Shown here one piece after another: positions 9,751-62,863 of a stretch of 64,000 bases of DNA. The DNA lies in assembly GCA_002269645.1 (NCBI GenBank), contig NIVC01000021.1, forward strand, positions 1 through 64,000. Direction: 5' to 3'. The stretch's first letter is position 1, and each line of letters starts with the position of its first letter. A program made the translations under genes and the position numbers. The stretch comes from Macrostomum lignano. Its lineage: Eukaryota. Under the pieces are notes generated by a model. The model did not search any database. It saw only the letters and a program-made list of their open reading frames with translations, and was not told the DNA's origin.

Positions 9751-9786
9751 CAAGCGACACCTACTCACGAGAGCCAAGGAACATAG

Positions 9787-23266: not shown

Positions 23267-25494
<2,228 letters not shown>

Positions 25495-26469: not shown

Positions 26470-26636
26470 ATGAAGTCAGCTCTAGTCGGGAGCAATCACC
26501 AGCCACTTGGTTGATGTATTTTGTTTCTCGTTTTATATATTTATAAATTGGAATTACAAAAGCATTGGGTACAAAGATTCGCGCAGAAATTTAAGTACAA
26601 AGACGCAGGTAAAATAGTGATTAGTCAGTCCTCTGC

Positions 26637-37110: not shown

Positions 37111-39159
37111 TCCAGGAGAAGTGGTTGGGCTTTCTAAATAAACAGGTACAAACTATAACAAACAAAAGCACGTCCTTTAAAAAAGAAATCCCAAATGAGA
37201 GAGAAATGGGGAGGATAGAAATGAATGAAGAATTCACGAAGACAGAGATAAGAAAGGGATTAAGGAAAGGTGCTAAAAACAATGTCGCATTGCACATGCG
37301 GTGTACAATAATAGGTTCGTGCAAAAGAAGTGAAAAATCATATAAATAGAAAAAATAAATAAACAAACGATCGCCGAGCGAGAAAGCATAATTCAGCAAA
37401 ATGCGTCGCTCATTCTCCCCTCCCGCCTGTGAAGTCCCCGTGTCGGGGGTTGCTGACCTCGATTGGCGGCTGCTGGCGAATGGCGACCCTCGGAGGATTA
37501 AGGAACCCTCGGATCATCTCGCGTCTGAGTGGTTGAGACGCTGTTGGGGGAAAGATAGCTTCACCCACCTCGAGTTCCAGGAGAACAAAGTCGACTGACG
37601 GCAGTCTACCATTCTCGCGCTCTCGCTGAATCGCCGATCTGTCGTTCACCAGCCAGCACCTCGCCACTCGCGGCTGAAATCGGAATGATGTCAATAATGT
37701 GCTTTGAATATCACATGAGTGACCGTATATTTGACGGCCAAAACTGGAGGGTCACGTTGATGGTCACTCATGAACCACTGTTTATTTACGAACTACTGTC
37801 ACATCTGTCACATTGACGGTCACATGAGTGACTGTGCATTTGACTGTCACACTGGAGGGTCATACGTAATTCCGTTGTTTGTGAGGGTTAAAAAACAGTC
37901 ACAGTCAAAATGTGACCATCCCACTTTTTACGGGCCACTTTCGAATGAACTTGTAATGTAATGCACTACAAACTCAGCAGTGTATAATGTGTTTTTATAT
38001 AGGTCAGAGAATGTTTAGCATTATGAAAAAATTCTACTTGGTTAGGGACAAATTTGTTAAGCAAAAAATGAATAATTTATTTTTTACGATTTCTCTAAAG
38101 CTGTGCAATATGTCCTAATTTAATTCAGGTGGCCAAGCACAAGACAATGCAATACGTTGGTGCGCCGAATGTAAACGTACATGAGTGTTGCAGCCTGCTC
38201 CAATGTCTGCTTCAAAGATGCGATAGTCAAAGCCCAACTGCCGAGGAAGCTGCGAGTCCATTCATCAAGTTAAAGTATGGCAGCTTCGAAGGGATATTCC
38301 TTAAATTTTAATTTTTCCTTAAGCAATTCTTTTGTGTGCTGTTACTTCCTATGACTGCGATTTTTATGTTGTATATTTAGTTATAAAAATTGTTTACACT
38401 AACAAAGAATGTCATTAATCGTTATTATCCCTATAGTGTCAGAAATGATAAATTTTCATTGTTTAATAACTTATTAACATTAATCTATCATTTAGTCAGG
38501 CTCTCTTGGCTGGCGCTGATAAACAGTTGGTGGCTGACGTCCGTATCACACTCCAAAAGTGGCACCTGATGCATACCAAGTGAATACGGACCGCTACCGA
38601 AGGGCGGACAGCGACGGACAGCGACGGGCGGACGTGCTTATGAGGGCAATTGAAGCGTGGACTAGCTAGGTAATGAGTTAAAAAAAAATAAACAATTTTT
38701 TCACTAGCTTTAACGAAATTCAATTAATATTATTAGATTGATCATATCCAGTAAATAAAAAGTATGTTGTGTTTGCGATTGCGTTCCATTTCCAACTGGA
38801 TGCGTAATTAATTTTTCTCAACTTTTGCTGCATTTTTATCCATCTTTTCATGCTAATTGTAAAAAAATTTGCTTTGAATGTTTCTGATGTAATTTTTTGA
38901 TGCTGTGCTACTGTTTGTTATTATATTGTACTTTATATTTGTTTTAGTTTACTATTCGTAAGTAGTAGTTAAGTAGTACAAATTCTTCAATGCTTCTAAA
39001 ATTTAAATTTGTAAAATGCTGTGAATAATGGTGTATAGATTGTGGTGTATCAAAACAAAAATATAGTCGTAAAATTGTTTAACAAAAATTTAATTAATTT
39101 ATAATTTGTTTTTTAGTTTCCATTTTTACCTTATACTGGTATACCTACACCATTTTCGG

Positions 39160-40920
39160 GTCATTTGTCCTGTTCGTGTTATTCCTTATCTGCATAGTGT
39201 CATTTGTCCTGTTCGTGTTATTCCTTATCTGCATAGTGTCATTTGTCCAAGCAGAGGGTCATTTGTCCTGTTCGTGTTATTCCTTATCTGCATAGTGTCA
39301 TGTCCAAGCAGAGGGTCATTTGTCCTGTTCGTGTTATTCCTTATCTGCATAGTGTCATTTGTCCAAGCAGAGGGTCATTTGTCCTGTTCGTGTTATTCCT
39401 TATCTGCATAATGTCATTTGTCCAAGCAGAGGGTCATTTGTCCAGTTCGTGTTATTCCTTATCTGCATAGTGTCATTTGTCCAAGCAGAGGGTCATTTGT
39501 CCTGTTCGTGTTATTCCTTATCTGCATAGTGTCATTTGTCCAAGCAGAGGGTCATTTGTCCTGTTCGTGTTATTCCTTATCTGCATAGTGTCATTTGTCC
39601 AAGCAGAGGGTCATCTGTCCAGTTCGTGTTATTCCTTATCTGCATAGTGTCATTTGTCCAAGCAGAGGGTCATTTGTCCTGTTCGTGTTATTCCTTATCT
39701 GCATAGTGTCATGTCCAAGCAGAGGGTCATTTGTCCTGTTCGTGTTATTCCTTATCTGCAGTGTCATTTGTCCAAGCAGAGGGTCATTTGTCCAGTTCGT
39801 GTTATTCCTTATCTGCATAGTGTCATGTCCAAGCAGAGGGTCATTTGTCCAGTTCGTGTTATTCCTTATCTGCATAGTGTCATGTCCAAGCAGAGGGTCA
39901 TTTGTCCTGTTCGTGTTATTCCTTATCTGCAGTGTCATTTGTCCAAGCAGAGGGTCATTTGTCCTGTTCGTGTTATTCCTTATCTGCATAGTGTCATGTC
40001 CAAGCAGAGGGTCATTTGTCCTGTTCGTGTTATTCCTTATCTGCATAGTGTCATGTCCAAGCAGAGGGTCATTTGTCCTGTTCGTGTTATTCCTTATCTG
40101 CATAGTGTCATGTCCAAGCAGAGGGTCATTTGTCCTGTTCGTGTTATTCCTTATCTGCATAGTGTCATGTCCAAGCAGAGGGTCATTTGTCCTGTTCGTG
40201 TTATTCCTTATCTGCATAGTGTCATTTGTCCAAGCAGAGGGTCATTTGTCCTGTTCGTGTTATTCCTTATCTGCATAGTGTCATTTGTCCAAGCAGAGGG
40301 TCATTTGTCCTGTTCGTGTTATTCCTTATCTGCATAGTGTCATTTGTCCAAGCAGAGGGTCATTTGTCCTGTTCGTGTTATTCCTTATCTGCATAGTGTC
40401 ATTTGTCTAGTTCGTGTTATTCCTTATCTGCATAGTGTCATGTCCAAGCAGAGGGTCATTTGTCCTGTTCGTGTTATTCCTTATCTGCATAGTGTCATGT
40501 CCAAGCAGAGGGTCATTTGTCCTGTTCGTGTTATTCCTTATCTGCAAAGTGTCATGTCCAAGCAGAGGGTCATTTGTCCTGTTCGTGTTATTCCTTATCT
40601 GCATAGTGTCATGTCCAAGCAGAGGGTCATTTGTCCTGTTCGTGTTATTCCTTATCTGCATAGTGTCATGTCCAAGCAGAGGGTCATTTGTCCTGTTCGT
40701 GTTATTCCTTATCTGCATAGTGTCATTTGTCCAAGCAGAGTGTCATTTGTCCTGTTCGTGTTATTCCTTATCTGCATAGTGTCATTTGTCCAAGCAGAGG
40801 GTCATTTGTCCTGTTCGTGTTATTCCTTATCTGCATAGTGTCATTTGTCCAAGCAGAGGGTCATTTGTCCTGTTCGTGTTATTCCTTATCTGCATAATGT
40901 CATCTGTCCAAGCAGAGGAT
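39160..40920. repeat. 57/59-bp satellite (20+39-bp subunits), about 30 copies
   Basis: GTCCAAGCAGAGGGTCATTTGTCCTGTTCGTGTTATTCCTTATCTGCATAGTGTCAT(TT). GTCATTTGTCC occurs twice per unit. Confidence 0.98.
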
Positions 40921-41727
40921 CATCTGTCTGTTCCTGTCATTGCCTGATCCATAGGCAGCCCACCCCGCATTAAATCACCCAAACCGGGGTCACATGACCT
41001 ACTAGGCTCGGCCCACCATAAGAGCAAGGCCCACAGGTTTAACACCCAACCAAGCCACAAAACTTTGCATTTGAAATTGACCAGCCTTTGTTTGTGAAGC
41101 AGACCAGACCATGAACAGCTGTCTACCCATCAATTATGATAACTGCAAATCAAATTCGAGCTACTCGCTTAGGAATTAAAAACTGCAGATTTTTATATTT
41201 TGACAATCAATAATTTTCATCAGCGTTTAGGATTTAAAAGTACATTAAGAAATTGTAGCATATGTAATCTTGAACTGGATAAAAATATATTTAGCTTACT
41301 ACGATATAAGCATACGGTAAAAATACAGTAATAATTATAATTTAATATTGCCAAGGAATAACAGAAAGTACACTATAGATCTGTATGCTGGGAAATCAAG
41401 ACATGAAAAGTCAAAACTGGAAACAATATTAACTGTATTTACAGCGATCAAACTTGGTGGATAGAAAATCGTTAAAATGTTCTTCATTAGCTACTAACAG
41501 TATGCTTTGCTGTCGCAGAGTATTAAGAAGCAAAAACTAACAATTTCAGAGCAAAAATGGAAGCAGGCGGTTCTAGACAGATAAAAGTGACAGTTCCGGG
41601 GTCTGCGAAATGGCAGAATTTATTGAGTCTTTTAATTAACTATGAGATCTGTGACTGATCCAGTTGATAGGCTGGCGCTACCGATGCCTGGTGCTTCAGT
41701 GATCACTACTCTCCCCTCCCCCAGCCT

Positions 41728-42395
41728 CATCAGTGACCCCCACTCTCCCCCAGACCCATCAGTGACCCCCACTCTCCCCCAGACCCATCAGTGACCCCCA
41801 CTCTCCCCAAGACCCATCAGTGACCCCCACTCTCCCCAGACCCATCAGTGACCCCCTCTCTCCCCAAGACCCACCAGTGACCCCCACTCTCCCCCAGACC
41901 CACCAGTGACCCCCACTCTCCCCCAGACCCACCAGTGACCCCACTCTCCCCCAGACCCACCAGTGACCCCCACTCTCCCCCTGACCCATCAGTGACCCCC
42001 ACTCTCCCAAGACCCATCAGTGACCCCCACTCTCCCCAAGACCCACCAGTGACCCACTCACCCCAAACCCATCAGTGACCCCCACTCTCCCCCAGACCCA
42101 TCAGTGACCCCCACTCTCCCCAAGACCCATCAGTGACCCCCACTCTCCCCAAGACCCACCAGTGACCCACTCACCCCAAACCCATCAGTGACCCCATCTC
42201 CCCCAGACCCATCAGTGACTCCCACTCTCCCCCTGACCCACCAGTGACCCCCACTCTCCCCAAGACCCATCAGTGACCCCCACTCTCCCCAAGACCCACC
42301 AGTGACCCCCACTCGCCCCAAACCCATTAGTGACCCCCACTCTCCCCCAGACCCATCAGTGACCCCCACTCTCCCCCAGACCCATCAGTGACCCA
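41728..42395. repeat. 29/30-bp C-rich minisatellite CCCATCAGTGACCCCCACTCTCCCCCAGA
   Basis: Direct reading. Confidence 0.95.
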
Positions 42396-42407
42396 ACTCT
42401 GACCCAG

Positions 42408-42499
42408 GTACCTCCATGGACCCGAACCCCCGCTCGTCCTGGATGAGACTGCAGACCCTGGATGAGGAACTGTCAGCAACAAGAAAGCAGTCAGTATGA
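42408..42499 (+). CDS. Possible terminal exon of an unresolved plus-strand gene, tail-to-tail with ATG3
   Basis: CCCAG| acceptor directly after the array; open frame TSMDPNPRSSWMRLQTLDEELSATRKQSV*. Upstream exons not established. Confidence 0.3.
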
Positions 42500-42664
42500 G
42501 AATATATGATGCGATTTCATCACGGAAAGTAATGGTGTGGATTATGACAGAAAACAATAAATACAAGATTAATTAATCCCACCAAATGGAGTCAATGAGT
42601 CAATGACAGGAAGTGAAAAAATCACCAAGCAGAGAGACTGACCAACAAACTTTTAAGCCAGGAC

Positions 42665-43458
42665 TCACAGCTCAAAATTACGGGTATAGTCGTACTCAAT
42701 AGTGGGAATCACGGCCTGCATGAACTTGAGGAAGATCAGCAGGTACTGGTGCACGCCCAGCTCCCGCCCGCCCTCCGACACCGTCACCATCAGCCGCTTC
42801 ATCACCTCGGCGTGACGGCACGGGTGCACGCTGGCCATGGGGGGCCCGGTCAGGTGCGGTTGCGTCTCCATGGTGACGGTCTTCTTGGCGTGGTCCTGGC
42901 TGAAGTCTGCGTACATCTGGTCCACGCTCAGCGGCGCTCCCTGCTCGCTGTAGCCAACCAGCCACATGCGCGGCGTCTGGTAGTACTTGTCGTACGTGAT
43001 GTGCAGGTCGTAGGTTCGAGTCTGCACAATGCTTTGATCTCCGCAGGCGCCGCTGTCGCTACCGGCGCCAGCTGCCCCGCTGCCGGCCTCGGCGCCGCCG
43101 GCTGTCATGACAACCGCGTCGTCCTCCAGCATGCCGGAGTTGGCGAAGGCCTCCATGTCCACCGCCTCCTCGTTGTCGTCATCTTCATCGTCGCCGCCTG
43201 CGTCCTCCGCCCGGCCGGCAGCACCAGCGGGCGCCGCCGCCGCCTCGTCCATCGACATGTCCTGCACCCGGTCGGCCAGGCCGCCGACGCCCGAGGCGCC
43301 ACCGCCGCTGCTACCGCCAGCGGCGCCGCCCTCCTGGGCGAAATGATGCGTGTCCACCCAGCCTCCGTCCGGGTCCGCCTCATCAATCACCTGTAAGCGG
43401 GCGGGTGAGCACTGCTCAGTATTTCACATTTATATCTATCTATCCATCTATCTATCTG

Positions 43459-43504
<46 letters not shown>

Positions 43505-43534
43505 CATCTATCCATCTATCTATCTATCTATCTG

Positions 43535-43577
<43 letters not shown>

Positions 43578-43578
43578 G

Positions 43579-43644
<66 letters not shown>

Positions 43645-43681
43645 CATCCATCTATCTATCTATCTATCTGTCTATCTATCC

Positions 43682-43761
<80 letters not shown>

Positions 43762-43762
43762 G

Positions 43763-43837
<75 letters not shown>

Positions 43838-44316
43838 GTCTATCTATCCATCTATCTATCTGTCTATCTATCCACCTATCTATCTGTTTATCCATCTAAC
43901 TATCTATATGTCTTATCTATCTACCTACCTACCTATCTATCTATCTATCTATCTAACTACCTATCTATCTACCTACCTAACCTACCTATCTGATCTGATA
44001 ACCCAATTCGCCCACCAACGCCAACCTTCTCCAAGCTGCGGTCGTGGCAGTCCATCTGGGCCACCCGCCGGTAGCAGGGCACATTCCGGGTGATAAGGAA
44101 CTGCTTCTCCGGCGGCAGGTGTGGCTTGGTGCGGGAGGCGTCCCCGGCCGACCACTGCCAGGTGGGACAGTGGTGCACCAGGAAGTCGCCGGCGGCAACG
44201 AACTCCTCGGGGGTGAGCACGCCAGTCTCTTTGAATTTGGACTCGCGCAGCACGGGAGTCATGTACTCGGCCACCTCCAAGCCTTTGCTCTTGACGGCAT
44301 TGATTAGCGACTGCAT
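42665..44316 (-). CDS. ATG3: Autophagy E2-like conjugating enzyme ATG3; exons 44316-44026 and 43390-42665
   Basis: [40 protein letters not shown]; [21 protein letters not shown]; catalytic HPC ([12 protein letters not shown]); [17 protein letters not shown]. Phase-0 intron. Confidence 0.98.
43432..43995. repeat. (TATC)n microsatellite filling the ATG3 intron
   Basis: Direct reading. Confidence 0.98.
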
Positions 44317-49754: not shown

Positions 49755-50847
49755 ATGGAAACCTGCATCAGTGAGTTAACATTGATTTTTAAAATCGTTT
49801 CTTGGTGCAAAAAGAAAAACGCAAGTCCTACATGCTATCATTTTTTCAGGCCATCTGCTGGTTGCGCTGCTTTGGTCCGCCCGGCTGACCGACTGCGAGA
49901 GTTTGTCAAGTGACTGGATGAGGTTGGGACTGCCGCAGTGCCTGCCCGAGGCCCAGGCCGTGAGGGTGGCCGAAACTCCATCCGGCATCTCCGACTGCGT
50001 CCTGCTCGCCATGGCTACAAAGGACTCGAGCGGCCAGCTGGTGGCCCAGTTCGACTCGGACACTCGCCAGTGCTCGCTCTTCCAATACACCGCAGTGTGC
50101 CACCTCATCGATGGACTCGCTGCTGCAGAGAGCTCGCAGTCCCGCCGCTGTGCCGCATTCGCCAATGACAGAGCCGCCAAGTTCCTCACCTTGAGCAGAA
50201 ACCTGGGCGCCAAGCTGAAAGCCGTCTGGGTGATGAGCGACGATGCGGACGCCAGCAGGAGCAACTTGGTGTGCGGCCAGACGCAGCAGTGGATGTCGGA
50301 GAATGTGGAGTGGAGCAGCGAGGGAGCCAAGCTCGACGGAGTGTCGTCCAAGATGTGGCTGGAGAACGTGGAGCTCGCGAACCTGCAGCAGGGACTCACG
50401 TGGCTGCTCAGGCTCAAGCGGGATGCCAAGATCGCTCCGCTGTTGCAGACTTACAACTGCGACTCCAAGTCTCTGGGAGCTGCTCTCTGGGACGGCTCAC
50501 CGACAGCTTGGGGCTTGTACTTTTTCAGGGTGGCTCCATCGTATTCAGTGTTCAAAACAACTCTGGAAACAAACTTTTTTGAACGGAACAAATTCGCCGA
50601 AGTTGCCGTAACTTCGGCATCTCCCTTTGACGTCGAATTCTTTTCCAAGGTTGGGCGTGTGTCAAAACCGAATGTAGTGCAGATGGAAAACTATACTATT
50701 GCTGCGGTCCCAAAAATCAACTGCATTGGTTTGGGGTTTCGACCTGGAAGGTCTCAAATGTTGAAGGGCACGGTGCAGGCGGTGGCCATCATGAACGACA
50801 CGATGACGGAGGCTGAGATCAGCAGCTTCTTCGAATTGGTGCGCTGA
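49755..50847 (+). CDS. Secreted PAN-like plus LamG/ConA-like protein, copy 1; exons 49755-49770 and 49850-50847
   Basis: ATG GAA ACC TGC ATC A|GTGAGT ... TTTCAG|GC gives METCISHLLVALLWSARLTDC. PAN-like DC...VAQFDSDTRQCSL. LamG-like end LKGTVQAVAIMNDTMTEAEI (cf. F-x-G-x-I-x-x-V-x-I-x-x-x-x-L-S-x-x-E-I). Confidence 0.75.
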
Positions 50848-51149
50848 CGCCCCGGCGGTCCAGAAAATGATTTTTCTGACAAGTAACAAAAAGTTCTCTG
50901 CTTTTTTGTGATGGCCGGTTTTTATTTTCTGAAAAATATAATTAAAGCAATCAAACATGCATTTAAGCGTCTTCAATCATTTTTCTTTTTATTTCGACGT
51001 AGTGCTGAGAGACTGAAAAGTTGGATCTGCAGCGTCTAAAAGTTTGTCACTCTTACTGCTAAATGGATGATAAGCAAGTTCTAACAAACGGAAACTTCAC
51101 ATCGTAAAGGACACAAATAAAAACAGTCAATCAAGCGACGGAGGCAGGG

Positions 51150-51496
51150 GGTGTCTGCACCCTGGGACACTTTAAGCGACATTGTCACACAACCCGTGAG
51201 AGGCATTGTTGCCCATTCCGCTGACTCCCTTGAGCAGACACACAAGCGCGCGGATACGTACACAGGCATACGCAAAGGCACACAGGAGTGTACAGCAGCC
51301 CTAACTTTATCTACAGTTATGCATGTACAATGTACACTTCACTGTGCCTTGGGGTTGGCCATCAAAGGCGTTAATTGCAAGTGCAGATCCAAGCCTAGAT
51401 TCCAATTTAGCTCCAAAATTAATGTGACTGCAGTTGGAATCGAGCATTGGCCACTGGCACATCAGAGCGCCGCGGTAATCCACTGGGCTGCGGCCC
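51150..51496 (-). mobile_element. Second SINE-like family, copy 1
   Basis: Head GGGCCGCAGCCCAGTGG...TGCTCGATTCC (A/B-box-like). Aligns in inverted orientation with 55896-56210. Confidence 0.55.
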
Positions 51497-52045
51497 TCAA
51501 TACATCAGCCAATACAAAAACTAAAGTATTCTTAAAGCGCTAGATTGCATGCATTTCACAGAGTCACCTGCAAGGGACTGGTTGTGGCAATAAAATTCGA
51601 AAATTCGGAAAGCAAATTGTTTTCATCACAGTTCAGCTCCTCAACTTTCCCTAACTACGTTTCCCGTATTGCCGTACGTGCCGTGACTATCTGAGTCTCC
51701 AAATAAATCCACACTAATTATGAGTTAACATCTCGATCGAGCACTACAAAGCCTAACCCGCGAACTTCACAGTTCCATGTTTCAAACACTCGAAGCTTTT
51801 GCAGCCTGTGTCGGTGCCCGTGTCAGTTTTTCTGTCTTTTGATGGCGTCTGTTCCTACAGTAGGCCACCCAGTCTCCGAATTTAACTGGCTCCCTAAATC
51901 GCTTGCCAATCAGAAGTCAGCGTCTCACAGGAAAATTACGCTATCAGATGCCGTGTAACTGAGGAATCGAGAGGACTTATAACGGCAAAGAGAAGCGCGA
52001 AAATTTTCGTTCAAACTACAGAATATTTCTGCATTCCAAGACATC

Positions 52046-53166
52046 ATGGCACTTTTTCTGACCTGTGCGCCAGCTTATGTGGGTGAGTTTGAGTGGGTTT
52101 TCTCGAATACCGAACTGCAAACTCAATCGCTCCGGACATTCTTTTTAAATATCTACCAGGTCACCTTCTGGTTGCGCTGCTTTGGTCCGCCCAGCTGACC
52201 GACTGTGAGAGTTTGTCAAGTGACTGGATCAGGCTTGGACTGCCGCAGTGCCTGCCCGACGCTCAGGCGGTAAGAGTGGCCAAAACTCCATCCGGCATTG
52301 GCTGCATCATGATCGCTATGGCTACAAAGGACTCGAGCGGCCTGCAGGTGGCCCAGTTCGACTCGGACACTCGCCAGTGCTCGCTCTTCCAATACACCGC
52401 AGTGTGCCACCTCATCGATGGACTCGCTGCTGCAGAGAGCTCGCAGTCCCGCCGCTGTGCCGCATTCGCCAATGACAGAGCCGCCAAGTTCCTCACCTTG
52501 AGCAGGAAGCTCATGCTGGGTGTGGGCTCGAAGCTGAGGGCCGCCTGGGTGATGAGCGACGATGCGGACGCCAGCAGGAGCAACTTGGTGTGCGGCCAGA
52601 CGCAGCAGTGGATGTCGGAGAATGTGGAGTGGAGCAGCGAGGGAGCCAAGCTCGACGGAGTGTCGTCCAAGATGTGGCTGGAGAACGTGGAGCTCGCGAG
52701 CGTGCAGCAGGGACTCACGTGGCTGGTCAGGCTCAAGCGGACTGTCCGAGTGGAGGCAACGCTGCTCGAATCCTTTAGCTGCGACTTCATGGCTCTTTGT
52801 GCGGGTTTTTGGGACGGCTGGACTGGTGGATGGGGCCTGTACTTCTTCAGGGTGGCTTCATATTACTTTGAGTACTTCACACCTTCTGCCACGAACTCGT
52901 TTGACCCGAATGGATTCGTAGAGGTCGGCGTTACTTCGGCGTCTCCGTCAAGCCGCGACTTCTTCTCTAACTCCGGGTTCGTGCCGCGGTCTGCTGTGAA
53001 CACTGGTTCTCAGCGTAACGGCGCCGTGTCGACATGCAACTGCATCCGCTTGGGATTTCGACCTGGCGACCTGCGAATGCTGAAGGGCACGGTGCAGGCG
53101 GTGGCCATCATGAACGACACGATGACGGAGGCTGAGATCAACCACTTCTTTTTTCTGGTGCGCTGA
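52046..53166 (+). CDS. Secreted PAN-like plus LamG/ConA-like protein, copy 2; exons 52046-52082 and 52160-53166
   Basis: MALFLTCAPAYVG|GTGAGT ... ACCAG|GT HLLVALLWSAQLTDC. Same intron position and phase as copy 1. Confidence 0.75.
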
Positions 53167-55039
53167 CCAGTCGACTGATAAATACATTTACAGTAGCTTA
53201 AAACGTTTGAGTGATTGCGGAACAAAACATTTTGCTGGGTTTTCACTGATAACGAGAGGTTTTTGTTCCCGAGATTGTCTGAAATATCGCAGTAAAGTTT
53301 GATGCTGTTTTATGAAATAAAACGAATTAGAATAAGAACAATAGTCAAAGCAGGTAATTAATATTTCACTGCAATATTATACGTTTTTATTCGTTAATTC
53401 CTCATTTTCTTATCAATGCCATGCTTGAGTTTGGAATGTTGAAACATTTGAAACACACTGAAACAAGAGTTCATTGGATTTTTTCCAAAGCCAAGAGAAC
53501 TGCCACCAGAGAAAGTCGAAAGTAAGCTGTCTCAAACTCTAAAAGCAAAACCATATTACATCTACCAGAGACGGTGTTTAAAACGCGCTTGTCAATTATT
53601 TCAATAACTGTCCAGTAACGCAGACATTGCTTGCTTTATATGCCTATTGGACGACCAAAAGGCAGTGTCACGTGCACGGCATTGTAGACACCACACTTGG
53701 ATTGGAAATATGGAGGGATCAATGGAGGGATTCATTTCAATGAAAGACATTTATTACATGAAAAGGTTCCTGCAACTCTTCCTTGACACAGCTGCAGGGG
53801 CTCCGGGCATTCAGATACAGCGGGGAGGCGTCGACGCCCATTTCGCTGACCCCTGGCGACCACGGGCAGCTGGTACTGCGGTGTCGCACAGGGAGATCCG
53901 GTGGTGCCGGTGTCCGCAGCGCGGTCCCCCTCCGAAGAGGCCAAGAGGAGGATTGTCCCTCGCCCGTGGTAGCCCTTAGGTAGCGGACGAGCTGGCACAG
54001 ATTCTCGGGCCTGAAAACGTCGGAGAGGTGAGCTTGTCCTGAGTAAAAGCGAGGAATTCACCCACGCAGTTGTCCGCATTCTCAACTCCGGAAAAGCAGA
54101 ATGAGTATTCATCACTGCAGATTTTCCCAGGAGGTGGCGATGCCTAGCAAAACAGCTATCCCTGATGTCCCTGTGGTTGAGTTCAAGCAGTGCCATGTGG
54201 AAGGCGAGAGAAGGACATGGAACAGCCGCAGGGGATTTCTGGAAGTCGGGGGCGTTAATAGTTCTGTCCAAAAATGCCACCTTTGAATCGGAGTGCTCTT
54301 ATAACTCTACTTATAGTAGCATAGATAAAATAATTCCAAGACAAAAAAGTTCCTTAAAAATGGAAAGCGTATCTAACTGGTACGAAGTAGGAGTTATTTG
54401 AAGTTTCTAGGAACATCCAGTATAAAGTATTGTCTCAGTCTGGAGCATGTGCATGATTTTAATGAGTCTAAGGAAAATCTATTTTAGCATTTGGCCATAT
54501 CGCAAGTATTGTATTAAAGCATGCTGCACAGCAAGTTCGTTAGTTTTGCGTATTTCAGAAAATTTCAGCGCTCGCAAAAACTTCTCCGTAGCAAACAAAG
54601 TCAGATTTTGCTGACTGAAAGCAAAGCCGAATTTCCACAGGTCTTAAACTGACTTGCTGCAACAGCGAAACTTGCGACGCCATGAATAGTGGCAAAGTGT
54701 GGCTTTTCAGCTAATGTGTCTTCGGCTTCAAAGCCCAATTTCGCAACTTGTAGCTAAATGGTATGAAGTCGGCGGTATAAGCTGAGCGAGAAAGCGTTTG
54801 AGCGAAACTGGCCAAGTTAGCGATTTATACCTAAGGTACATTTGAGCTGCTAGAAGTGAATGCTCCGACGTGTCAACGACGCGCATGAATTATCGATCGC
54901 GTGCAACCCCAGATGTACATTTAGAAAAGAATAAAGCTCACTAATTTAAAGCAAACTAACAACGTTATTGCTTCGTCCAGCTGATCAACGGTATTCACGG
55001 TATTTTCAAACCACTTGTACAGGCCGTGACTCTTACTGT

Positions 55040-55160
55040 GCCAGCAGGAGCAAATTGGTGTGTGGCCAGTGGATGTCGGAGAATGTGGAGTGGAGCAGCG
55101 AGAGAGCCAAGCTCGACGGAATCTCGTCCAAGATGTGGCTGGAGAACGTGGAGTTCGAGA
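55040..55160 (+). pseudogene. Relic fragment of the PAN/LamG family
   Basis: ASRSKLVCGQ-WMSENVEWSSERAKLDGISSKMWLENVE; flanks are non-homologous. Confidence 0.8.
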
Positions 55161-55624
55161 AGTCGAAGCATGCAGGAACTCAAAGAATTATTCACTCGAG
55201 CTCTTTGCACTAAGTTGTTTTAAAAACAGGTCAAACAGGTGCATGTTTCTAGCAGGCTCGACTCACCTTTAAGCTGAGACTTGTACCTCTTTTTGTAGAG
55301 TCTCATCCTTCTCGAAGTTGTGAATGTCTCGGCCATGTTCGCGTTTGATCCTAACGAGTCCTAACGAGCAATGAACGATTCACCTTTCACCTTGTCCGCG
55401 AGTGTTACGAAGAAACCATAACAATACCTTTAGCATCCAATGAGTTCATGCTCTGGGTTGGTTCGTTAAAGAAACTGTTCGTAAAATCCACCCGTCGCTC
55501 CTACTAAAAATTACGATATGCAAGTCCCAAACAAAAGCGGAGAGCACAATGGCTAGTAACATGACTTTTCTGGCCACTAAAATGCATTAAACTAATAAGA
55601 GCAGGGCGGTCAACCTACGGAATA

Positions 55625-55750
55625 ACGTGGTCCAACTTGGTGTTCGACCAGACGCAGCAATGGATATCAGTGTCATCCAAGACGTGGTGGGAAAATGTTG
55701 AGTAAATAATGCTTCAGTGACTCACGTGGCTGGTGAGGCTCGAACTATTA
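55625..55750 (+). pseudogene. More decayed relic of the same block
   Basis: CAACTTGGTGTTCGACCAGACGCAGCAATGGAT...TCCAAGACGTGG...GACTCACGTGGCTGGTGAGGCTC, with a deletion and stops. Confidence 0.65.
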
Positions 55751-55895: not shown

Positions 55896-56210
55896 AGGCC
55901 TAGTGGTCTTGCGCAGCGCTCTGAAGTGCCAGCGGCCCAGGCTCGATGCTATTTTAAGTCAAATTAATTTGGGACTAAATTGGAATCTTGGCATGGGCCT
56001 GCTCGTGCAATTAATGCCATTGAGACTCAGCATCATCAGCATCATCGTGTATCAGATCTATCCTTTGTAAGTGTGTGCCTGTGCGTACGACTGCGTACGT
56101 ATCCGCGCGCTTGTGTGCCTGCTCAGCAGAGTCGGCGGAATGGGCAGTAATGCCTCTCGGGACAATGTCGCTTAAAGTGCGCCAGGGTGCGCACAGCCTT
56201 CCTGCTTCGA
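55896..56210 (+). mobile_element. Second SINE-like family, copy 2
   Basis: GGCCTAGTGG...GGCTCGATG head. The body CGTATCCGCGCGCTTGTGTG...ACAATGTCGCTTAAAGTG is the reverse complement of ~51160-51265. Confidence 0.55.
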
Positions 56211-57193: not shown

Positions 57194-57275
57194 CTATAAC
57201 CCCTAGCCCGCGCCGCAGGCGCGAAGGGTCGGAAAGAATAGAAGCTATTTATAGTCAGCTCACCTACCCACCCAA

Positions 57276-57373
57276 CATTCCATTTAGACCAGATTTTAGA
57301 CCAAATTTTTGAAAACGAAAACCAAAACGATAGTCTAGTTTTGTTTGGTCTAAAATCTGGTCTAAATGGAATG
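57276..57373. repeat. Perfect 30-bp inverted repeat upstream of the first viral ORF
   Basis: CATTCCATTTAGACCAGATTTTAGACCAAA (57276-57305) / TTTGGTCTAAAATCTGGTCTAAATGGAATG (57344-57373). Confidence 0.95.
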
Positions 57374-57411
57374 CAGACAATCTTTTTCTGTTACTAAAAA
57401 TAGAACAAAAA

Positions 57412-57810
57412 ATGACACACGTTACACATGTGCAAAATATAAATGAGTATCAGGTAGGAGATCCAATTGAATACCGAGGTGAGGGACTTTTTGATTTGGT
57501 TGGAACAGCAGCAAATTTTGTTAAAGACAATATGGGGCTTATAGGGCAAGCTGGCTCTGCAGCAGGCTCTATAACAAATGCTGTAAAAGGAGGAATTGAA
57601 GCAGCTAGAGCGGCAGAAGAACTAAAGAAATTGAGAGATTTTAACGACACCCTCTCACAAATAAATGCAATAAAAGATTTAAAGCTGGCACAAGCCGCAC
57701 AACCAACAGAAACCCCCACGAAAAGCGCACCAATAAGTAATAAAGATATTCAGGATTTTAATAAAATGTTAAATACTATTAAAGGTGGAAAAGGATTAAA
57801 GAAATTTTAA
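57412..57810 (+). CDS. Polinton putative virion core/membrane-active protein (132 aa)
   Basis: RGEG-LFDLVGTAANFVKDNMGLIGQAGS is an amphipathic segment after a GxG motif; C-terminal GGKG-LKKF. Confidence 0.6.
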   Translation: MTHVTHVQNINEYQVGDPIEYRGEGLFDLVGTAANFVKDNMGLIGQAGSAAGSITNAVKGGIEAARAAEELKKLRDFNDTLSQINAIKDLKLAQAAQPTETPTKSAPISNKDIQDFNKMLNTIKGGKGLKKF

Positions 57811-57820
57811 CAATATAAAA

Positions 57821-58813
57821 ATGGACTCAGTTAATGATGAAAACCGGTTATATTTTATAGGAGAAATTGTAGATACCTTAAATCTTGATGATAATAAACA
57901 TAGCCACACAATGTTAAAAAGATTGGATCGATTAGGTAAAAAGTTTGACTACGACATCGATACATTTAAACTCGCAGCAAAATATGCACAAGAAGGAAGG
58001 CCAATATCCTTTAAGAATCGCGGCAGAAATTATAGGTTGACAGACTCCGATGTGAAATTTTTAATGGAGACTCACACTAAAAAGGACGGCGGATTACTAC
58101 CCATTCTACCGCTTCTTTTAGGACTTGGTGCAGCTGGAGCAGTCGGTTTAGCCGGAAAAAGAATTCATGATAATGTAAAACAGCTAGGAGAGTTAAGAGC
58201 GAAACAGGGGGGAATCTTACCCCTTGCAGCTTTGCTCCCAATAATTTTTGCAGGAATTGGAGCAGCTGGAGGAGTTGCTGGCGGAGCAGCTGGAATTGCA
58301 AAAGCAGTAAATGACAAAAAAGCTGCGGACGAAAAAGCCAAACGAGATGCAGAATTTCAAAGACAGCAAATAACGCAGGACGCACAATTCAAACAGAAAC
58401 TTATTGATACCATTAATAGTAGTTCAGCAACAGCAGAGCAAAAAAGAAATGCAGAAGCTAGGTTAGCAGCCGGAAAAGGTTTACTCTTGCAAGGAACAAA
58501 TCACGGGAATGGTTTGGTACTAAAAGGAACAACCCAAGGAAGTGGAGTTGTAGCAGATAAACTACATGAATTTGGTCAAACTTTAGAAAAAACGGGTGAG
58601 AAAGCTAAAGGATTTTTTGACAATATTGGATCCAATTTTAGGCCAGCAGTTCAGAAGATTTTTACTAAGTTAGGAAAAGATTTTAATATCATTGAAAAAC
58701 ACGACGGAAGCGGATTATATCTCGAAATGAGACCAAAAGCAGGTTCAGGAATTTTCTTAAATTCAAACGTTATGGGCAATGGATTGCTATTACCAAAAGC
58801 AGATCTCGAATAG
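57821..58813 (+). CDS. Polinton core-protein precursor with adenovirus pX-like segments (330 aa)
   Basis: GG-LLPILPLLLGLGAAG and GG-ILPLAALLPIIFAGIGAAGGVAGGAAGIAKAVN resemble adenoviral pX GG-FLPALIPIIAAAIGA; six further GxG-hydrophobic motifs. Confidence 0.7.
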   Translation: MDSVNDENRLYFIGEIVDTLNLDDNKHSHTMLKRLDRLGKKFDYDIDTFKLAAKYAQEGRPISFKNRGRNYRLTDSDVKFLMETHTKKDGGLLPILPLLLGLGAAGAVGLAGKRIHDNVKQLGELRAKQGGILPLAALLPIIFAGIGAAGGVAGGAAGIAKAVNDKKAADEKAKRDAEFQRQQITQDAQFKQKLIDTINSSSATAEQKRNAEARLAAGKGLLLQGTNHGNGLVLKGTTQGSGVVADKLHEFGQTLEKTGEKAKGFFDNIGSNFRPAVQKIFTKLGKDFNIIEKHDGSGLYLEMRPKAGSGIFLNSNVMGNGLLLPKADLE

Positions 58814-58896
58814 GCTCCTGGGGGAGGGTCTGGACACCAAAAACACAAAATTAAAAAATCAATAATTCAAACATTATATAAATTTTATTCTATAAA

Positions 58897-61800
58897 ATGG
58901 AAGCAATTTTAGCTCAAATCGACAACCCTGAACTTAGAGCACAATTAATAGCTCAAATCGATGCACAACGAATTGCCGATAGGGCTGAAATAGAAGCAAG
59001 AATTAGGGCAGAAAATGAGATACGTTTAGAAAGACAATTAAATGATATTAATAACCCCCAACCACAAGTACAAAATGGAGCTGAAGTAATATATATAGAT
59101 ATAGATATAAATACAAATTATAAAGAATATTTTAAACAAATGAAAGATAAATTAAAGACTATATTAAACAATTATACTATAAGGCCAAATAACAAACGAC
59201 AGCCAATTAAGTATAAAATAGAAGTTGAAACAGAATTTAAAAAACCAAATATTCTTAATGCAAATTCAGAAATTGAAGTAATAAATAACTTTTCACAAGA
59301 ATCATATAAAACATTATTATCAATGGGAAATTACAACAATCAATTCGATCAAATAGAAGCTGAGTTTGATGAATGGATAGATAAGATGACAGAAAACGGA
59401 TCTGGGTTTATATTTGTATCCTGTAATTCAGCAATAGTAAAGATTGCACCTATAGAAATTCTTAAAGGACGATCACATATGAAGCTCAAATTTAAATCAC
59501 CTATGATTATAAATCCAGACAATAAAGATAATAAATGTTTATTATGGTGTTTATTAATTCATAAATATCACAATCAAGTAGAATCACACATTAATAAAAT
59601 ATATAATTATAGACAATATGAGGATGAAATAATAATGAAAAACATATCATACCCAGTAGCAATAGATGATATATATAAGATTGAAAAAATGAATGGTTTA
59701 AATATTAATGTTTTTACAATTGAAGAACCAAAAGATCTAGAAGAAATTCAGCAGGTCGATCCAGAATGGTATAAGAAAAACTGTTATCTTGTTAAGCCAG
59801 CAACTGATATAACAGCACCAGATCAAATCGATCTTTTGTACATGCAGCGCGAAAATGAAACACATTATATATACATAAAAGATATTAGTTCTTTTTTAAG
59901 AGAAAATAGAAATAGATATCCACTATGTAGAAATTGTTTTACATTTAAAAAGGATGAAACAGCTCTTAAAAACCACCAACGATTTTGTTTAGATCACAAA
60001 TTTACTAATGCTATAATGCCAGCATCTGAAGATGCAACCCTAAAGTTCCAACAACATTATATGGCAGTTAAAAAACCAATAGTAATATATGCTGATTTTG
60101 AAGCAACAAATGTTCCCTTAAAAGAATCACAGACGGTATCTGATGACGGTGAATGCACAAAAAAATTGGCACAACAGTTTCCGAATAGTTATTGTATATA
60201 TGTACACTCTGTAGCTGATCATATATTTAAATCAAGGATGATTACTTACCACGGTAATTATGCAGCTAAGCACATGGCAGAATCATTAGTAAATGTATTT
60301 GAATATATTCAAAATCAATATGATAAATTATCAAAAAATATTAATATGACAAATAAGGATAGAGACAATTATAAAAATGCAACAAATTGTTTTATGTGCA
60401 AAAGACATTTAAGTAAGAATAATAAGATACGAGAACATTGTCATCTAACAGGAAATTATCGAGGGGCAGCATGTAGATCATGTAATGCAAAAGAAGGAAA
60501 AGGATGTAAGGAAATACCAGTATTTTTTCATAATGGTTCCGGATATGATTTTCATTTCTTAGTTCGAGAATTGCTTCATTTAGGAAAGGATGAATATGAA
60601 ATAAATATATTACCTAAAACATCAGAAAATTACATATCAATAACATATGGTAAGAAATACTCCCATCTAGTTTTTCTAGATTCCTTGAGATTCTTATCAA
60701 CATCTTTAGCAAATGTTGTTTCATCATTAGTTCCAAAACCATGGGATTTAGAAATAGTAAAGAAAAACTTTCCAATCTTATTGAATCGTTTCAAAAAAGA
60801 AAAACTATCCGAGGAAGAACTAATGCTATTAACTCGTAAGGGCATCTACCCATATGAATATGTAACATCTGAAGACGTATTTTTTCATACCGAATTACCC
60901 CAATTGAAAAGTTTTATTCAACATTATCACAAACAAACATAAGTGAATCGGATTATGAACACGCTCAAAAAGTATGGAAATACTTTAATTGTAAAACATT
61001 TAAAGATTATCATAATCTATATCTTAAAGCAGATGTTCTCCTATTAGCTGATGCATTTGAAAACTTTAGGAATCATACATATGAGAATTTTAAAATTGAT
61101 CCCGCATATTGTTTCAGTGCACCGGGATTAACATGGGCTTGTGGTTTGAAACATACAGATGTTAAGATTGATTTACTAACTGATCATGATATGTTGTTAA
61201 TGATTGAGAGAGGAATTCGCGGTGGATTCTCGGGTGTACTAGGAGATAGATATACTAAAGTAAATAATAAATATCTACCAAATTATAATAAAAAAGAAAA
61301 ATCATCATATGTATTATATCTAGATGCAAACAATTTATACGGTGGTTGTATGAAACAAAAATTACCAATAGCTGATTTCCAATGGGAAGATGACCCCGAT
61401 TATTACAAAAATATTCCCGAAGGAAGGGGCTGTATCGTAGAAGTGGATTTGCAATATACTCGGGAAGCAAAAGCAAAAACATATAAATATCCTTTAGCTC
61501 CAGAGCATTGTTCAGTTAATGAAGATGATTTATCACAAACACAAAAAGATTATCTTAAAGTAGATAATACAAAACATCTAGCAACAAAAAAATTAATATT
61601 AAATTTACATGATAAGAAAAACTATGTAGTGCATTATAAGCTTCTACAATTTTATGAAAAGCAGGGATTAAAAGTGTCTAAAGTACATCGAACAATATCG
61701 TTTATTGAGGAAGATTGGTTAGCTAAATATATTGACTTTAATTCAAATCAGAGACAGATGTCAAAAACAAATTTTGAGAAAGATTATTGGAAATTAATGA

Positions 61801-62863
61801 ATAATGCTTTTTATGGAAAAACGGTTGAAAATATTAGAGATAGAACCCAATTCCATTTAGAAAAGGATATTGATAAAGCAAAGAAATATTTCTCAAAACC
61901 TAACTTTAAAGACTTTATAAAATTTGATGATAACTTTATGGGTATTCATATGAGAAATAAAACAACAAAATTTCTTAAACCAATATTTATTGGAATGGTT
62001 GTTTTAGATTTGCAAAGCTAGTAATGTATGAATACTATTATGATGTTATAAATAAAACATGGCCAGATAACTATCCAATATATGCAGACACCGACAGTTT
62101 GGTATTTAAGGTTGAAACAGATGACCGGACGGAGTCCGCGAACCAAAGGTTCGATGTCTATAAAGATATGGAAAAAATTAAGGATACATTGGATACCTCC
62201 GACTATCCGGATAACCATCCTTTAAAATCAGATCAAAATAAAAAAGTTGTACTTAAAATGAAAGATGAATTAAATAGCAAAATCATAACCGAGTTTATAG
62301 CAATAAGATCAAAATGCTATGCATTTAAGGTTTTAGGACAGGAGGGAGAGGTAAAAAAAATAAAAGGGGTATCAAGAGCAGCAGTAAAAAAGATAACATT
62401 TGATGATTATAAAAACGTACTTTTAGATTACCTTAATACAATTGAAAATTATCATGCTCCACAATATCGATTAAATTCAGATAAGCATCAGATGTTTGTC
62501 ATCGAGACAGATAAAAAAACATTAAGTCCATTTGATGATAAAAGATATTTAGATGATAAAATTAAAACATATCCATATGGTTTAAAAGAAGAGATAAAAA
62601 ATATGATAAAAGATAAAAAACAAAAAGAAGATATAATAAGTAAATATAATGAATACAAAGCGGCAATAAATAATTATTATTACGATTGTGATTGTGAATC
62701 CGAATGTGATTGTGAATATAATACATTTCTAGAATATGAAAAAGATATAGATAATTATTATTCAACATTTCCAAAAGAACTTAAAAAATTAAATAAGGAA
62801 AAAGTCTTGAATAACTGGAAGAGATTAACAGAAAAATTACTTATCGGGTCTGTAAAAAACTAA
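58897..62863 (+). CDS. polB: Protein-primed family B DNA polymerase with endonuclease-VII-like insert; split by two apparent 1-nt deletions (60898-60901, ~62013)
   Basis: Exo I IYADFE; CFMC...IREHCHLTGNYRGAACRSCN; Exo II FHNGSGYDFHF; KGIYPYEY; motifs A YLDANNLYG, B KLMNNAFYGK, C YADTDSL. The bridging frame 60902-61145 reads PIEKFYSTLS...HAQKVW...YLKADVLLLADAFENFR. Confidence 0.95.

What the first reader, a model, noticed from the sequence alone, without database searches (positions are those of the whole stretch)
49755..55750. Mosaic paralogs: identical blocks alternate with a hypervariable LamG-like region, followed by relic cassettes
Seen: copies 1 and 2 match 186/188 nt (50011-50198 vs 52318-52505), 155/155 (50226-50380 vs 52545-52699) and 60/60 (50762-50821 vs 53081-53140), including synonymous sites. 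The ~110 aa between the last two blocks are only roughly 40% identical by eye, and first exons and introns are unrelated. Two downstream relics preserve the 155-nt block specifically. Inference: ongoing patchwise gene conversion homogenises the framework while the putative ligand-binding face diversifies, a pattern typical of invertebrate immune or recognition lectin families. This may be an undescribed variable-receptor family.
Basis: partly seen in the sequence, partly recalled or inferred. Interest (0 to 1): 0.7.

Follow-up and report, generated by a model that had tools for sequence, protein, structure and literature searches.

The report
Flatworm lectin-fold paralogs patched by gene conversion
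Two neighbouring genes of a secreted, lectin-shaped protein family found so far only in Macrostomum flatworms keep some stretches letter-for-letter identical by copying them from one another, while the middle of the gene has drifted far apart: a real but familiar way for gene families to evolve.

Summary
Homology between the copies is confined to exon 2; exon 1, the intron and the flanks are unrelated.

Silent sites show several ages inside one 1-kb exon. dS is 0-0.02 in the three blocks, 0.30 in the N-terminal part and 1.0-1.5 in the ~113-codon middle. No 4-fold site differs in the blocks (0/59) against 13/33 in the middle, and a block-free runs test gives P<1e-5. Segments also group paralogs differently, and GC3 is 0.9 in blocks B and C against 0.5-0.6 in the middle. 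Short-tract gene conversion between old tandem duplicates fits best.

The genes encode a signal peptide, a six-cysteine N-domain and a ConA/LamG-like beta-sandwich (AlphaFold pLDDT 82; Foldseek E 1e-7). Every strong hit whose source I looked up is M. lignano or an unnamed metagenome contig.

Diversifying selection is not shown: omega is 0.3-0.5, and core strands vary as well as loops. There is no membrane anchor by eye and no evidence for an immune role.

Both relics hold block B only, which remains unexplained. An R-x-K-R motif sits exactly at the constant-to-variable switch.

Verdict: a new, lineage-restricted family showing a known evolutionary process.

The parts
49755..49770 (+). Copy 1 exon 1 (METCI + first base of the next codon; start of the signal peptide)
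   Evidence: ATG followed by a GTGAGT donor. Splicing to 49850 gives one open frame to the stop. No transcript evidence.
49771..49849 (+). Copy 1 intron (79 nt, GTGAGT...TTTTTTCAG)
   Evidence: It is unrelated to the copy 2 intron. The acceptor position is shared with copy 2, L001 and the organism-2 contigs.
49850..50847 (+). Copy 1 exon 2: rest of the signal peptide, six-Cys N-domain, ConA/LamG-like domain, stop codon 50845-50847
   Evidence: ORF. Family HMM E 1.8e-112. AlphaFold model pLDDT 82.3.
50011..50198 (+). Block A, copy 1 (second half of the N-domain); partner is 52318-52505
   Evidence: 186/188 nt. dS 0.023. About 89-90% identical to paralog L001.
50226..50421 (+). Block B plus extension, copy 1 (first six strands of the lectin fold, ending in RLKR); partner is 52545-52740
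   Evidence: 155/155 nt to 50380. There is no silent change up to 50421. 152/155 nt identical to L001. GC3 0.92. No RNA structure signal, z = +0.56.
50422..50761 (+). Old, unconverted middle of the lectin domain, copy 1 (eight strands plus loops); partner is 52741-53080
   Evidence: 46% aa identity. dS 1.3, dN 0.43, omega 0.32. GC3 0.52 in copy 1 and 0.64 in copy 2.
50762..50821 (+). Block C, copy 1 (last strand plus start of the C-terminal helix); partner is 53081-53140
   Evidence: 60/60 nt. dS 0 between the copies but 0.39 to L001.
52046..52082 (+). Copy 2 exon 1 (MALFLTCAPAYV + first base of the next codon)
   Evidence: ATG, GTGAGT donor, in-frame splice to 52160. Unrelated to copy 1 exon 1.
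52160..53166 (+). Copy 2 exon 2 (same layout as copy 1; stop codon 53164-53166)
   Evidence: Family HMM E 5.5e-111. Weak Laminin_G_3 hit, E 0.012, at residues 240-340.
55040..55182 (+). Relic 1: block-B-only fragment with a 9-nt in-frame deletion, lying in an 87-codon open frame (54950-55210)
   Evidence: nhmmer E 8e-41, profile positions 414-561 only. 25/27 and 95/104 nt to copy 1. tblastn hits.
55633..55743 (+). Relic 2: block B plus extension fragment, 42-nt deletion, stop codons
   Evidence: nhmmer E 6.3e-15, profile positions 425-580 only. tblastn hits.
51141..51488 (.). Context: one arm of a ~330-nt inverted repeat; the partner is 55898-56208. The pair brackets copy 2 and both relics.
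   Evidence: About 70% identity over 350 nt. Sub-arms are 87% and 82% complementary. Absent from L001.

Best explanation
The locus is a head-to-tail array of genes from a small, lineage-restricted family of secreted proteins. Each protein has a signal peptide, a six-cysteine N-domain and a ConA/LamG-like beta-sandwich. Two members are intact and two are block-B-only fragments.

The two intact genes are old duplicates: their unconverted middle has dS above 1 and their non-coding parts share nothing. They still exchange short tracts (about 60 to 400 nt) by non-allelic gene conversion. This happens where protein constraint has kept enough similarity: the second half of the N-domain, the first third of the lectin fold, and its last strand.

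Conversion resets those tracts to identity and appears to have pushed their third-codon positions towards G/C. The middle of the lectin fold has escaped conversion. It evolves under relaxed purifying selection, so each paralog carries its own version of most of the sandwich and presumably a different binding specificity.

Shown here: the mosaic of silent-site ages, segment incongruence, the GC3 contrast, the fold, the family's narrow distribution, and the same layout in other subfamilies.

Inferred: conversion as the process, its direction, secretion, and any ligand or biological role.
For: Silent-site ages: blocks A, B and C have dS 0-0.02 and 0/59 4-fold differences. The N-terminal part has dS 0.30. 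The middle has dS 1.0-1.5 in all three pairs among c1, c2 and L001.

Silent-site runs tests that ignore block definitions give P<=4.5e-4 and <1e-5 for c1-c2, and 0/50,000 shuffles for each pair with L001.

At least five switches of divergence level fall within 1 kb. That is too many for unequal crossing-over.

Homology stops at the exon 2 borders, so this is not a recent whole-gene duplication.

Incongruence between segments:
- The N-terminal part groups c1 with c2 (88%) against L001 (57%).
- The linker groups c2 with L001 (21/22).
- The tail groups c1 with L001 (23/26).
- P0004 is L001-like at its N-terminus and copy-2-like afterwards.

GC3 is 0.92 in B, 0.89-0.93 in C and 0.52-0.64 in the middle, and L001 shows the same contrast.

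Silent sites in block B are free to change over long times: 14/44 identical-residue codons differ between the window and organism 2.

Fold: AlphaFold pLDDT 82.3, pTM 0.79. Foldseek hits are ConA-like lectin domains at E 1e-7. Laminin_G_3 matches 8/20 members, best E 1.2e-5.

Distribution: 45 hits among 1.84 billion representatives. Of the 31 at E<=1e-10 I looked up 16; all are M. lignano or unnamed metagenome contigs.
Against: - No reads were available, so short-read polishing could have erased a few true differences inside blocks that were already similar.
- The species of the window is not pinned down. If L001 belongs to another species, its 152/155 match in block B would point to nucleotide-level constraint there, not inter-locus conversion.
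- High GC3 in the blocks could reflect codon preference at conserved residues rather than biased conversion.
- The block-B-only relics are not predicted by simple conversion between intact genes.
- There is no transcript evidence for the gene models.
Confidence: 0.75

Rival explanations
1. One reading: a variable recognition or immune lectin family. Conversion keeps a framework constant while positive, diversifying selection drives the ligand-binding surface apart.
For: The constant-to-variable switch falls at the same structural point (just after the ...RLKR strand) in three M. lignano subfamilies and in organism 2. In organism 2, mean pairwise identity is 66% in block B against 28% in the middle. 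The fold is lectin-like. The proteins look secreted and the family is lineage-specific.
Against: Omega is 0.3-0.5 in all three pairs, not above 1. dS is saturated, so site-wise selection cannot be judged. Variation covers core strands (54% identity) as well as loops (40%). There are no expression, induction or binding data and no membrane anchor.
Confidence: 0.2
2. The direction is reversed: the framework is shared through relatively recent common ancestry, and the middle segments were imported from other, divergent paralogs. Conversion would then act as a diversifier (cassette shuffling).
For: P0004 combines an L001-type N-terminus with a copy-2-type remainder. Inside the middle region, L001 resembles c1 in one patch (TxLETNFF) and c2 in another (SSRxFFSNxGFVP). 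Organism-2 contigs share segments in a patchwork.
Against: Exon 1, intron and flanks are unrelated, and the N-terminal part has dS 0.30, so the gene pair as a whole is not young. P0004 and the metagenome contigs come from short-read or early assemblies that can be chimeric. No donor for either middle segment is in hand.
Confidence: 0.25
3. The blocks are held identical by selection on the nucleotide sequence itself (an RNA structure, a regulatory element or a small-RNA target), not by conversion.
For: Block B is 152/155 identical even in L001, on another contig. Both relics consist of just this block.
Against: Block B shows no RNA fold signal, z = +0.56. Silent codon differences occur at 14/44 identical-residue codons between the window and organism 2. 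Blocks A and C are 10-13% different in L001. Relic 1 has already drifted about 8%.
Confidence: 0.07
4. It is an assembly or polishing artefact: reads from one copy were used to correct the other, or the assembly is chimeric.
For: No reads could be examined. Identity is perfect over lengths similar to a short read.
Against: The window carries multi-kb near-perfect tandem arrays, for example 30001-32254 and 26961-28859. By my reasoning these are unlikely to assemble from short reads alone, so the assembly is probably long-read based, and such reads would span two copies 2.3 kb apart. The blocks are flanked on both sides by unique sequence. The same pattern appears in the separate M. lignano contig L001 and in metagenome contigs from four samples.
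Confidence: 0.07

Closest known systems
Laminin_G_3 / concanavalin A-like lectin-glucanase superfamily (Pfam PF13385)
   Same: The beta-sandwich fold matches: Foldseek probability 1.0, E 1e-7 to 1e-5 against the lectin-like domains of trypanosome trans-sialidases, a GH43 arabinanase domain 4 and ERGIC-53. It has the start typical of Laminin_G_3 (W at strand 1, 'DG.SS') and the typical end ('GTV..V.I.N..MTE.EI') by eye (own knowledge).
   Different: The window copies are below Pfam's cut-off: 16.1 versus 27.6 bits for copy 2 and no hit for copy 1. The six-Cys N-domain has no Pfam match. Sugar- or metal-binding residues were not examined.
Fibrinogen-related proteins (FREPs) of the snail Biomphalaria (own knowledge, not tested here)
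   Same: A secreted, lectin-type multigene family in an invertebrate, in which gene conversion between clustered paralogs produces mosaic sequences.
   Different: FREPs are built from IgSF plus fibrinogen domains, and none are present here. Somatic diversification and parasite binding are documented for FREPs; nothing comparable is known here.
Sea urchin SpTransformer (Sp185/333) genes (own knowledge, not tested here)
   Same: Small two-exon genes in tight tandem clusters. Exon 1 encodes the leader. Exon 2 is a mosaic of blocks shared between paralogs.
   Different: Those proteins are disordered and repeat-rich, and the mosaic arises from presence or absence of elements. Here the protein is a folded lectin-like domain with fixed architecture, and the blocks differ in age, not in presence.
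Conotoxin and amphibian skin-peptide precursors (own knowledge, not tested here)
   Same: The N-terminal part is conserved down to silent sites between paralogs. A basic processing motif sits at the junction (here R-x-K-R in 15/20 members). A highly divergent C-terminal part follows.
   Different: Here the divergent part is the interior of one beta-sandwich whose first and last strands lie in the conserved parts. The C-terminal block is also conserved. Cleavage is untested and structurally doubtful.
Segmental gene conversion in MHC and immunoglobulin V gene families (own knowledge)
   Same: The process matches: short-tract, non-allelic conversion between clustered paralogs gives patchwork identity and discordant segment trees.
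   Different: In those families conversion is best known for spreading variation in the binding region. Here the converted parts are the conserved ones.

Membership tests
Gene-conversion mosaic between paralogs (a process, not a protein family) | Silent-site differences are significantly clustered, with long difference-free runs | tested here: met
   Runs of 59 and 58 eligible codons. P = 4.5e-4 for the longest and <1e-5 for the second. 0/50,000 shuffles for each pair with L001.
Gene-conversion mosaic between paralogs (a process, not a protein family) | Different segments support different relationships among three or more paralogs | tested here: met
   The N-terminal part, linker, middle and tail each group c1, c2, L001 and P0004 differently. 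Caveat: P0004 is a protein from an early assembly.
Gene-conversion mosaic between paralogs (a process, not a protein family) | GC enrichment at silent sites within tracts (GC-biased conversion) | tested here: inconclusive
   GC3 is 0.92 and 0.89-0.93 in blocks B and C against 0.52-0.64 in the middle. Codon preference at conserved residues could give the same contrast.
Pfam Laminin_G_3 (PF13385) | Score at or above the curated gathering cut-off (27.6 bits) | tested here: not met
   Copy 2 scores 16.1 bits (E 0.012) and copy 1 has no hit. 8/20 family members match at E<=0.1, best 1.2e-5.
ConA-like lectin/glucanase fold | A two-sheet jelly-roll sandwich recognised by structure comparison | tested here: met
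   AlphaFold pLDDT 82.3, pTM 0.79. 182 PDB matches at E<=0.001. All 50 listed hits are chains whose matched region I take, from own knowledge, to be a ConA-like lectin or lectin-like domain.
PAN/Apple domain (for the N-domain) | A Pfam PAN model match and the conserved Cys core | tested here: not met
   No PAN family appears at E<=1 or in 20 members. Six Cys are present, but that alone is not diagnostic. The N-domain fold was not searched separately.
Family under diversifying (positive) selection | dN/dS above 1 in the variable region | tested here: not met
   Omega is 0.32, 0.36 and 0.48 for the three pairs, with dS saturated at 1.0-1.5. Site-wise tests are not possible with these data.
FREP / SpTransformer-type immune diversity families | Homology or shared domain composition; immune induction; somatic variation | tested here: not met
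   No IgSF or fibrinogen domains are present and there is no sequence similarity. Induction and somatic variation are not testable with these tools.
Prepro-peptide precursors with a hypervariable mature part | A basic convertase motif at the conserved/variable junction, and release of the variable part | tested here: inconclusive
   R-x-[KR]-R is present in 15/20 members exactly at the switch. It lies in a predicted strand (182-190) of a single domain. Cleavage is not testable here.

The most novel reading that the evidence does not exclude
Macrostomid flatworms may carry a genuine germline-encoded diversity system. Dozens of secreted lectin-fold genes would be built to one plan. Conserved nucleotide blocks, above all block B ending at an invariant R-x-K-R, would serve as homology anchors for recombination. 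This would keep shuffling and preserving highly divergent binding modules, with block-B-only fragments as by-products. The proteins would act in self/non-self, microbe or mate recognition, possibly after convertase cleavage at the junction.
Probability: 0.15. Interest if true: 0.75.

Novelty: new member of a known kind. Interest (0 to 1): 0.42.

Why it matters
It defines a protein family that no database names, found so far only in Macrostomum and an unidentified relative. The family has a clear domain plan and an unusually clean case of several evolutionary ages inside one exon.

For people working on Macrostomum lignano, which I know as a regeneration and sexual-selection model that takes RNAi, it offers a tractable candidate for a fast-evolving secreted recognition or reproductive protein family.

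For genome annotators it is a warning. The public gene models I saw for this family are fused (P0004) or truncated (P0001), and the L001 copy carries two frame shifts.

The process itself, conversion keeping conserved parts identical while divergent parts escape, is well known.

Tried and rejected
- AlphaFold with only 5 sequences gave pLDDT 37 and was unusable. It was repeated with 20 sequences.
- An exact-protein look-up of copy 1 from its first internal Met found nothing. No independent assembly of this locus was obtained.
- The word-indexed protein search found only 3 and 5 relatives. The full HMMER scan was needed.
- The metagenome contig scan returned only the contig already known, after a first alignment was too diverse to use.
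- To identify the species, the neighbouring GPCR was searched. Its best hit was only 34% identical, so the species is not settled. P0004's fused SPATA6 part is not in the window.
- No tRNA or Rfam family lies under the inverted repeat or the blocks.
- Block B shows no RNA structure.
- There are no further family copies in the window or in L001. A weak tblastn hit at 12.6 kb was not confirmed.
- Literature searches for Macrostomum plus gene conversion, LamG or PAN, and for the gene id, found nothing relevant.
- Mapping variable residues onto a surface could not be done because model coordinates are not exposed. Only secondary-structure classes were compared.
Full report
**What is there**

The window is eukaryotic. 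It has short GT-AG introns, GC-rich exons in AT-richer DNA, and many long tandem arrays.

The finding covers two head-to-tail genes, 2.3 kb apart on the + strand.
- Copy 1: exon 1 49755-49770, a 79-nt intron, exon 2 49850-50847, 337 aa.
- Copy 2: exon 1 52046-52082, a 77-nt intron, exon 2 52160-53166, 347 aa.

Both introns have GTGAGT donors and CAG acceptors. The acceptor position is shared with a paralog on another contig and with metagenome relatives. There is no transcript evidence.

**Checking the observation**

A sensitive blastn of the two loci finds homology only from 3 nt before the exon 2 acceptor to 1 nt after the stop (49847-50848 versus 52157-53167). Exon 1, intron, 5' flank and 3' UTR share nothing.

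The codon alignment shows alternating levels of divergence. Nei-Gojobori estimates are:

| Segment (copy 1 coordinates) | dS, c1 versus c2 | Other |
|---|---|---|
| N-terminal part of exon 2 (49852-50010) | 0.30 | omega 0.3 |
| Block A (50011-50198) | 0.023 | |
| Block B (50226-50380) | 0 | no silent change up to 50421 |
| Middle (50422-50761) | 1.32 | dN 0.43 |
| Block C (50762-50821) | 0 | |

No 4-fold site differs in the blocks (0/59), against 13/33 in the middle and 5/26 in the N-terminal part.

The blocks were chosen by eye, so I also ran a test that ignores them. Among 233 codons with identical, degenerate amino acids, 36 carry a silent change. The two longest change-free runs are 59 and 58 codons. 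P = 4.5e-4 for the longest, and none of 100,000 shuffles matched the second.

The middle region is 46% identical in protein.

**A third paralog**

The only named close relative is a Macrostomum lignano protein, P0001. Its locus L001 carries a full-length copy with two frame disruptions in the N-domain.

Identity of L001 to c1 and c2, by segment:

| Segment | Identity to c1/c2 |
|---|---|
| N-terminal part | 57-58% |
| Block A | 89-90% |
| Linker | 21/22 to c2, 16/22 to c1 |
| Block B | 152/155 |
| Middle | 60-62% |
| Block C | 52/60 |
| Tail | 23/26 to c1, 20/26 to c2 |

The middle has dS 1.0-1.5 and omega 0.32-0.48 in all three pairs. Silent-site runs are again significant for both pairs with L001.

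P0004, another M. lignano protein, is L001-like in its N-terminal part. From block A onward it is identical or close to copy 2.

So different segments tell different histories, which is the signature of recombination between paralogs. At least five switches within 1 kb favour short-tract conversion over unequal crossing-over.

Third-position GC is 0.92 in block B, 0.89-0.93 in block C and 0.76-0.78 in block A. In the middle it is 0.52 (copy 1) and 0.64 (copy 2). L001 shows the same contrast. This fits GC-biased conversion but does not prove it.

**Is it constraint on the DNA itself?**

Block B has no RNA fold signal (z = +0.56). Compared with the metagenome relative L003, 14 of 44 identical-residue codons in block B differ silently. 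Silent sites there are therefore free to change over long times.

One caveat remains. I could not establish that the window is M. lignano. A neighbouring GPCR has no match better than 34% in the protein collection. If L001 belongs to a different species, its near-identity in block B would need another explanation.

**What the genes encode**

Pfam gives only a sub-threshold Laminin_G_3 hit for copy 2 (16.1 versus 27.6 bits). Eight of 20 family members match it, best E 1.2e-5.

With a 20-sequence alignment AlphaFold gives pLDDT 82.3 and pTM 0.79. The model has an alpha/beta N-domain (residues ~20-118, six Cys) and a beta-sandwich.

Foldseek against the PDB finds 182 matches at E<=0.001. They are led by trypanosome trans-sialidases. 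Other listed hits are clostridial neurotoxins and their NTNH partners, a GH43 arabinanase domain 4 and the L-type lectin ERGIC-53. From my own knowledge, what these share is a ConA-like, lectin-type sandwich domain. This is resemblance of fold only.

By eye the N-terminus is a signal peptide, and there is no membrane anchor.

Mapped on the model:
- Block B is the first six strands.
- The middle is eight strands with their loops.
- Block C is the last strand plus the C-terminal helix.

Within the middle, strands are 54% and loops 40% identical between the copies. Variation is therefore not confined to loops.

**How wide the family is**

A full HMMER scan of 1.84 billion representative proteins finds 45 hits, 31 of them at E<=1e-10. 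I looked up the source of 16 of those 31. All are M. lignano predicted proteins, often fused models, or unnamed metagenome contigs. The weak tail includes prokaryotic LamG proteins.

Two further M. lignano subfamilies show the same layout: near-identical protein up to the '...[LM]KR' strand and divergence right after it.

Contigs of the second organism, from four samples, share nucleotide-identical segments in a patchwork. Their mean pairwise protein identity is 66% in block B and 28% in the middle. Those contigs are short-read assemblies, so their particular segment combinations may be chimeric.

**The relics**

A DNA profile of the three genes finds only 55040-55182 and 55633-55743 downstream. 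Both match block B (profile positions 414-561 and 425-580) and nothing else. A protein HMM agrees.

Relic 1 is 25/27 and 95/104 identical to copy 1, with a 9-nt in-frame deletion. Relic 2 is more decayed.

Uniform decay of a whole gene cannot leave one block about 92% identical and the rest undetectable. Either only block B was copied there, or old pseudogenes were deleted down to this block, or the block keeps being refreshed by conversion. I cannot decide between these.

**Interpretation**

The best explanation, with confidence about 0.75, has three parts:
- The genes are old tandem duplicates of a secreted lectin-fold gene.
- Short-tract gene conversion continues wherever similarity is still high, keeping those parts identical.
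- The middle of the fold has escaped conversion and evolves under relaxed constraint.

These are diversifying selection on a binding face, an immune or recognition role, and a receptor.

One detail is worth following. The constant-to-variable switch falls exactly after an R-x-[KR]-R motif that 15 of 20 members keep. It looks like a convertase site, but it lies in a predicted strand of the fold.

**Verdict**

The feature is real, and the family is new and restricted to one lineage. The process behind it is a known one.

Noticed in passing
window 57412-62863 (+): An AT-rich stretch (GC 0.27-0.33) holds five back-to-back ORFs on one strand. The 681-aa ORF (58897-60942) has an Endonuclease VII-type zinc finger (Pfam 8.7e-7; PHROG 9e-6). 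By eye it also has the Exo I/II motifs of a protein-primed family-B DNA polymerase (YADFEAT, HNGSGYDFHF). This looks like a Maverick/Polinton-like or virus-derived insert. No phage match was found. It may run on towards the window end.
   Followed up: partly
window 50407-50421 (copy 1) and 52726-52740 (copy 2): The motif LRLKR (R-x-K-R, a convertase-type site) ends exactly where identity between the copies stops. R-x-[KR]-R is kept in 15 of 20 family members at this point. It lies in a predicted beta-strand.
   Followed up: partly
window 51141-51488 and 55898-56208: Two copies of a ~330-nt element lie in opposite orientation (about 70% identical, sub-arms 82-87% complementary). They bracket copy 2 and both relics. 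No tRNA or Rfam match; absent from L001. This could be two insertions of one repeat family or the ends of a larger element.
   Followed up: partly
window 53780-54240 (-) and L001 4084-4605: A second, weakly similar segment (about 68% nt, 30-57% aa) lies close to the family gene in both loci, but in a different relative orientation. It has an ORF of 182 aa with no Pfam match.
   Followed up: partly
L001 9650-10000: The M. lignano paralog has two frame disruptions in its N-domain (a 1-nt insertion and an 8-nt deletion relative to the window copies). The public model, P0001, starts at an internal Met. It is either a pseudogene or an assembly indel.
   Followed up: partly
window 13802-15724 (-): A single 640-aa ORF encodes a leucine-rich-repeat GPCR (LRR_8 plus 7tm_1, GRL101-like). 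Its best match in 5.8 billion proteins is only 34% identical.
   Followed up: partly
window 8791-9777 (-): An ORF has reverse transcriptase and GIY-YIG nuclease hits, both below Pfam's cut-offs. The combination suggests a Penelope-like retroelement fragment.
   Followed up: no
window 19111-21504 (-) and 5592-6347 (-): Long ORFs with CUB domains (E 1.4e-17) and an HMG box (E 1.4e-9). These are probably exons of neighbouring genes.
   Followed up: no
window 21500-34900 and 39100-44000: Very dense satellite-like arrays, for example 150 copies of a 15-mer at 30001-32254, 68 copies of a 28-mer at 26961-28859 with an inverted partner array at 34328-34862, and (GACA)n and (TATC)n runs. An interstitial telomere-like (AACCCTAACCTA)n lies at 22717-22966.
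   Followed up: no
L002, L003, L005, L006, L007: Metagenome contigs of the second organism begin or end inside the conserved blocks. L002 ends in a short self-repeat. This is what short-read assemblers do at sequences shared by many paralogs. L007 leaves the family sequence right after VWVMSDD.
   Followed up: partly
window 57271-57379 (+): A hairpin-like stretch gives far sub-threshold hits to three plant miRNA precursor families (E 0.001-0.003). It is probably a small inverted repeat, not a miRNA.
   Followed up: no
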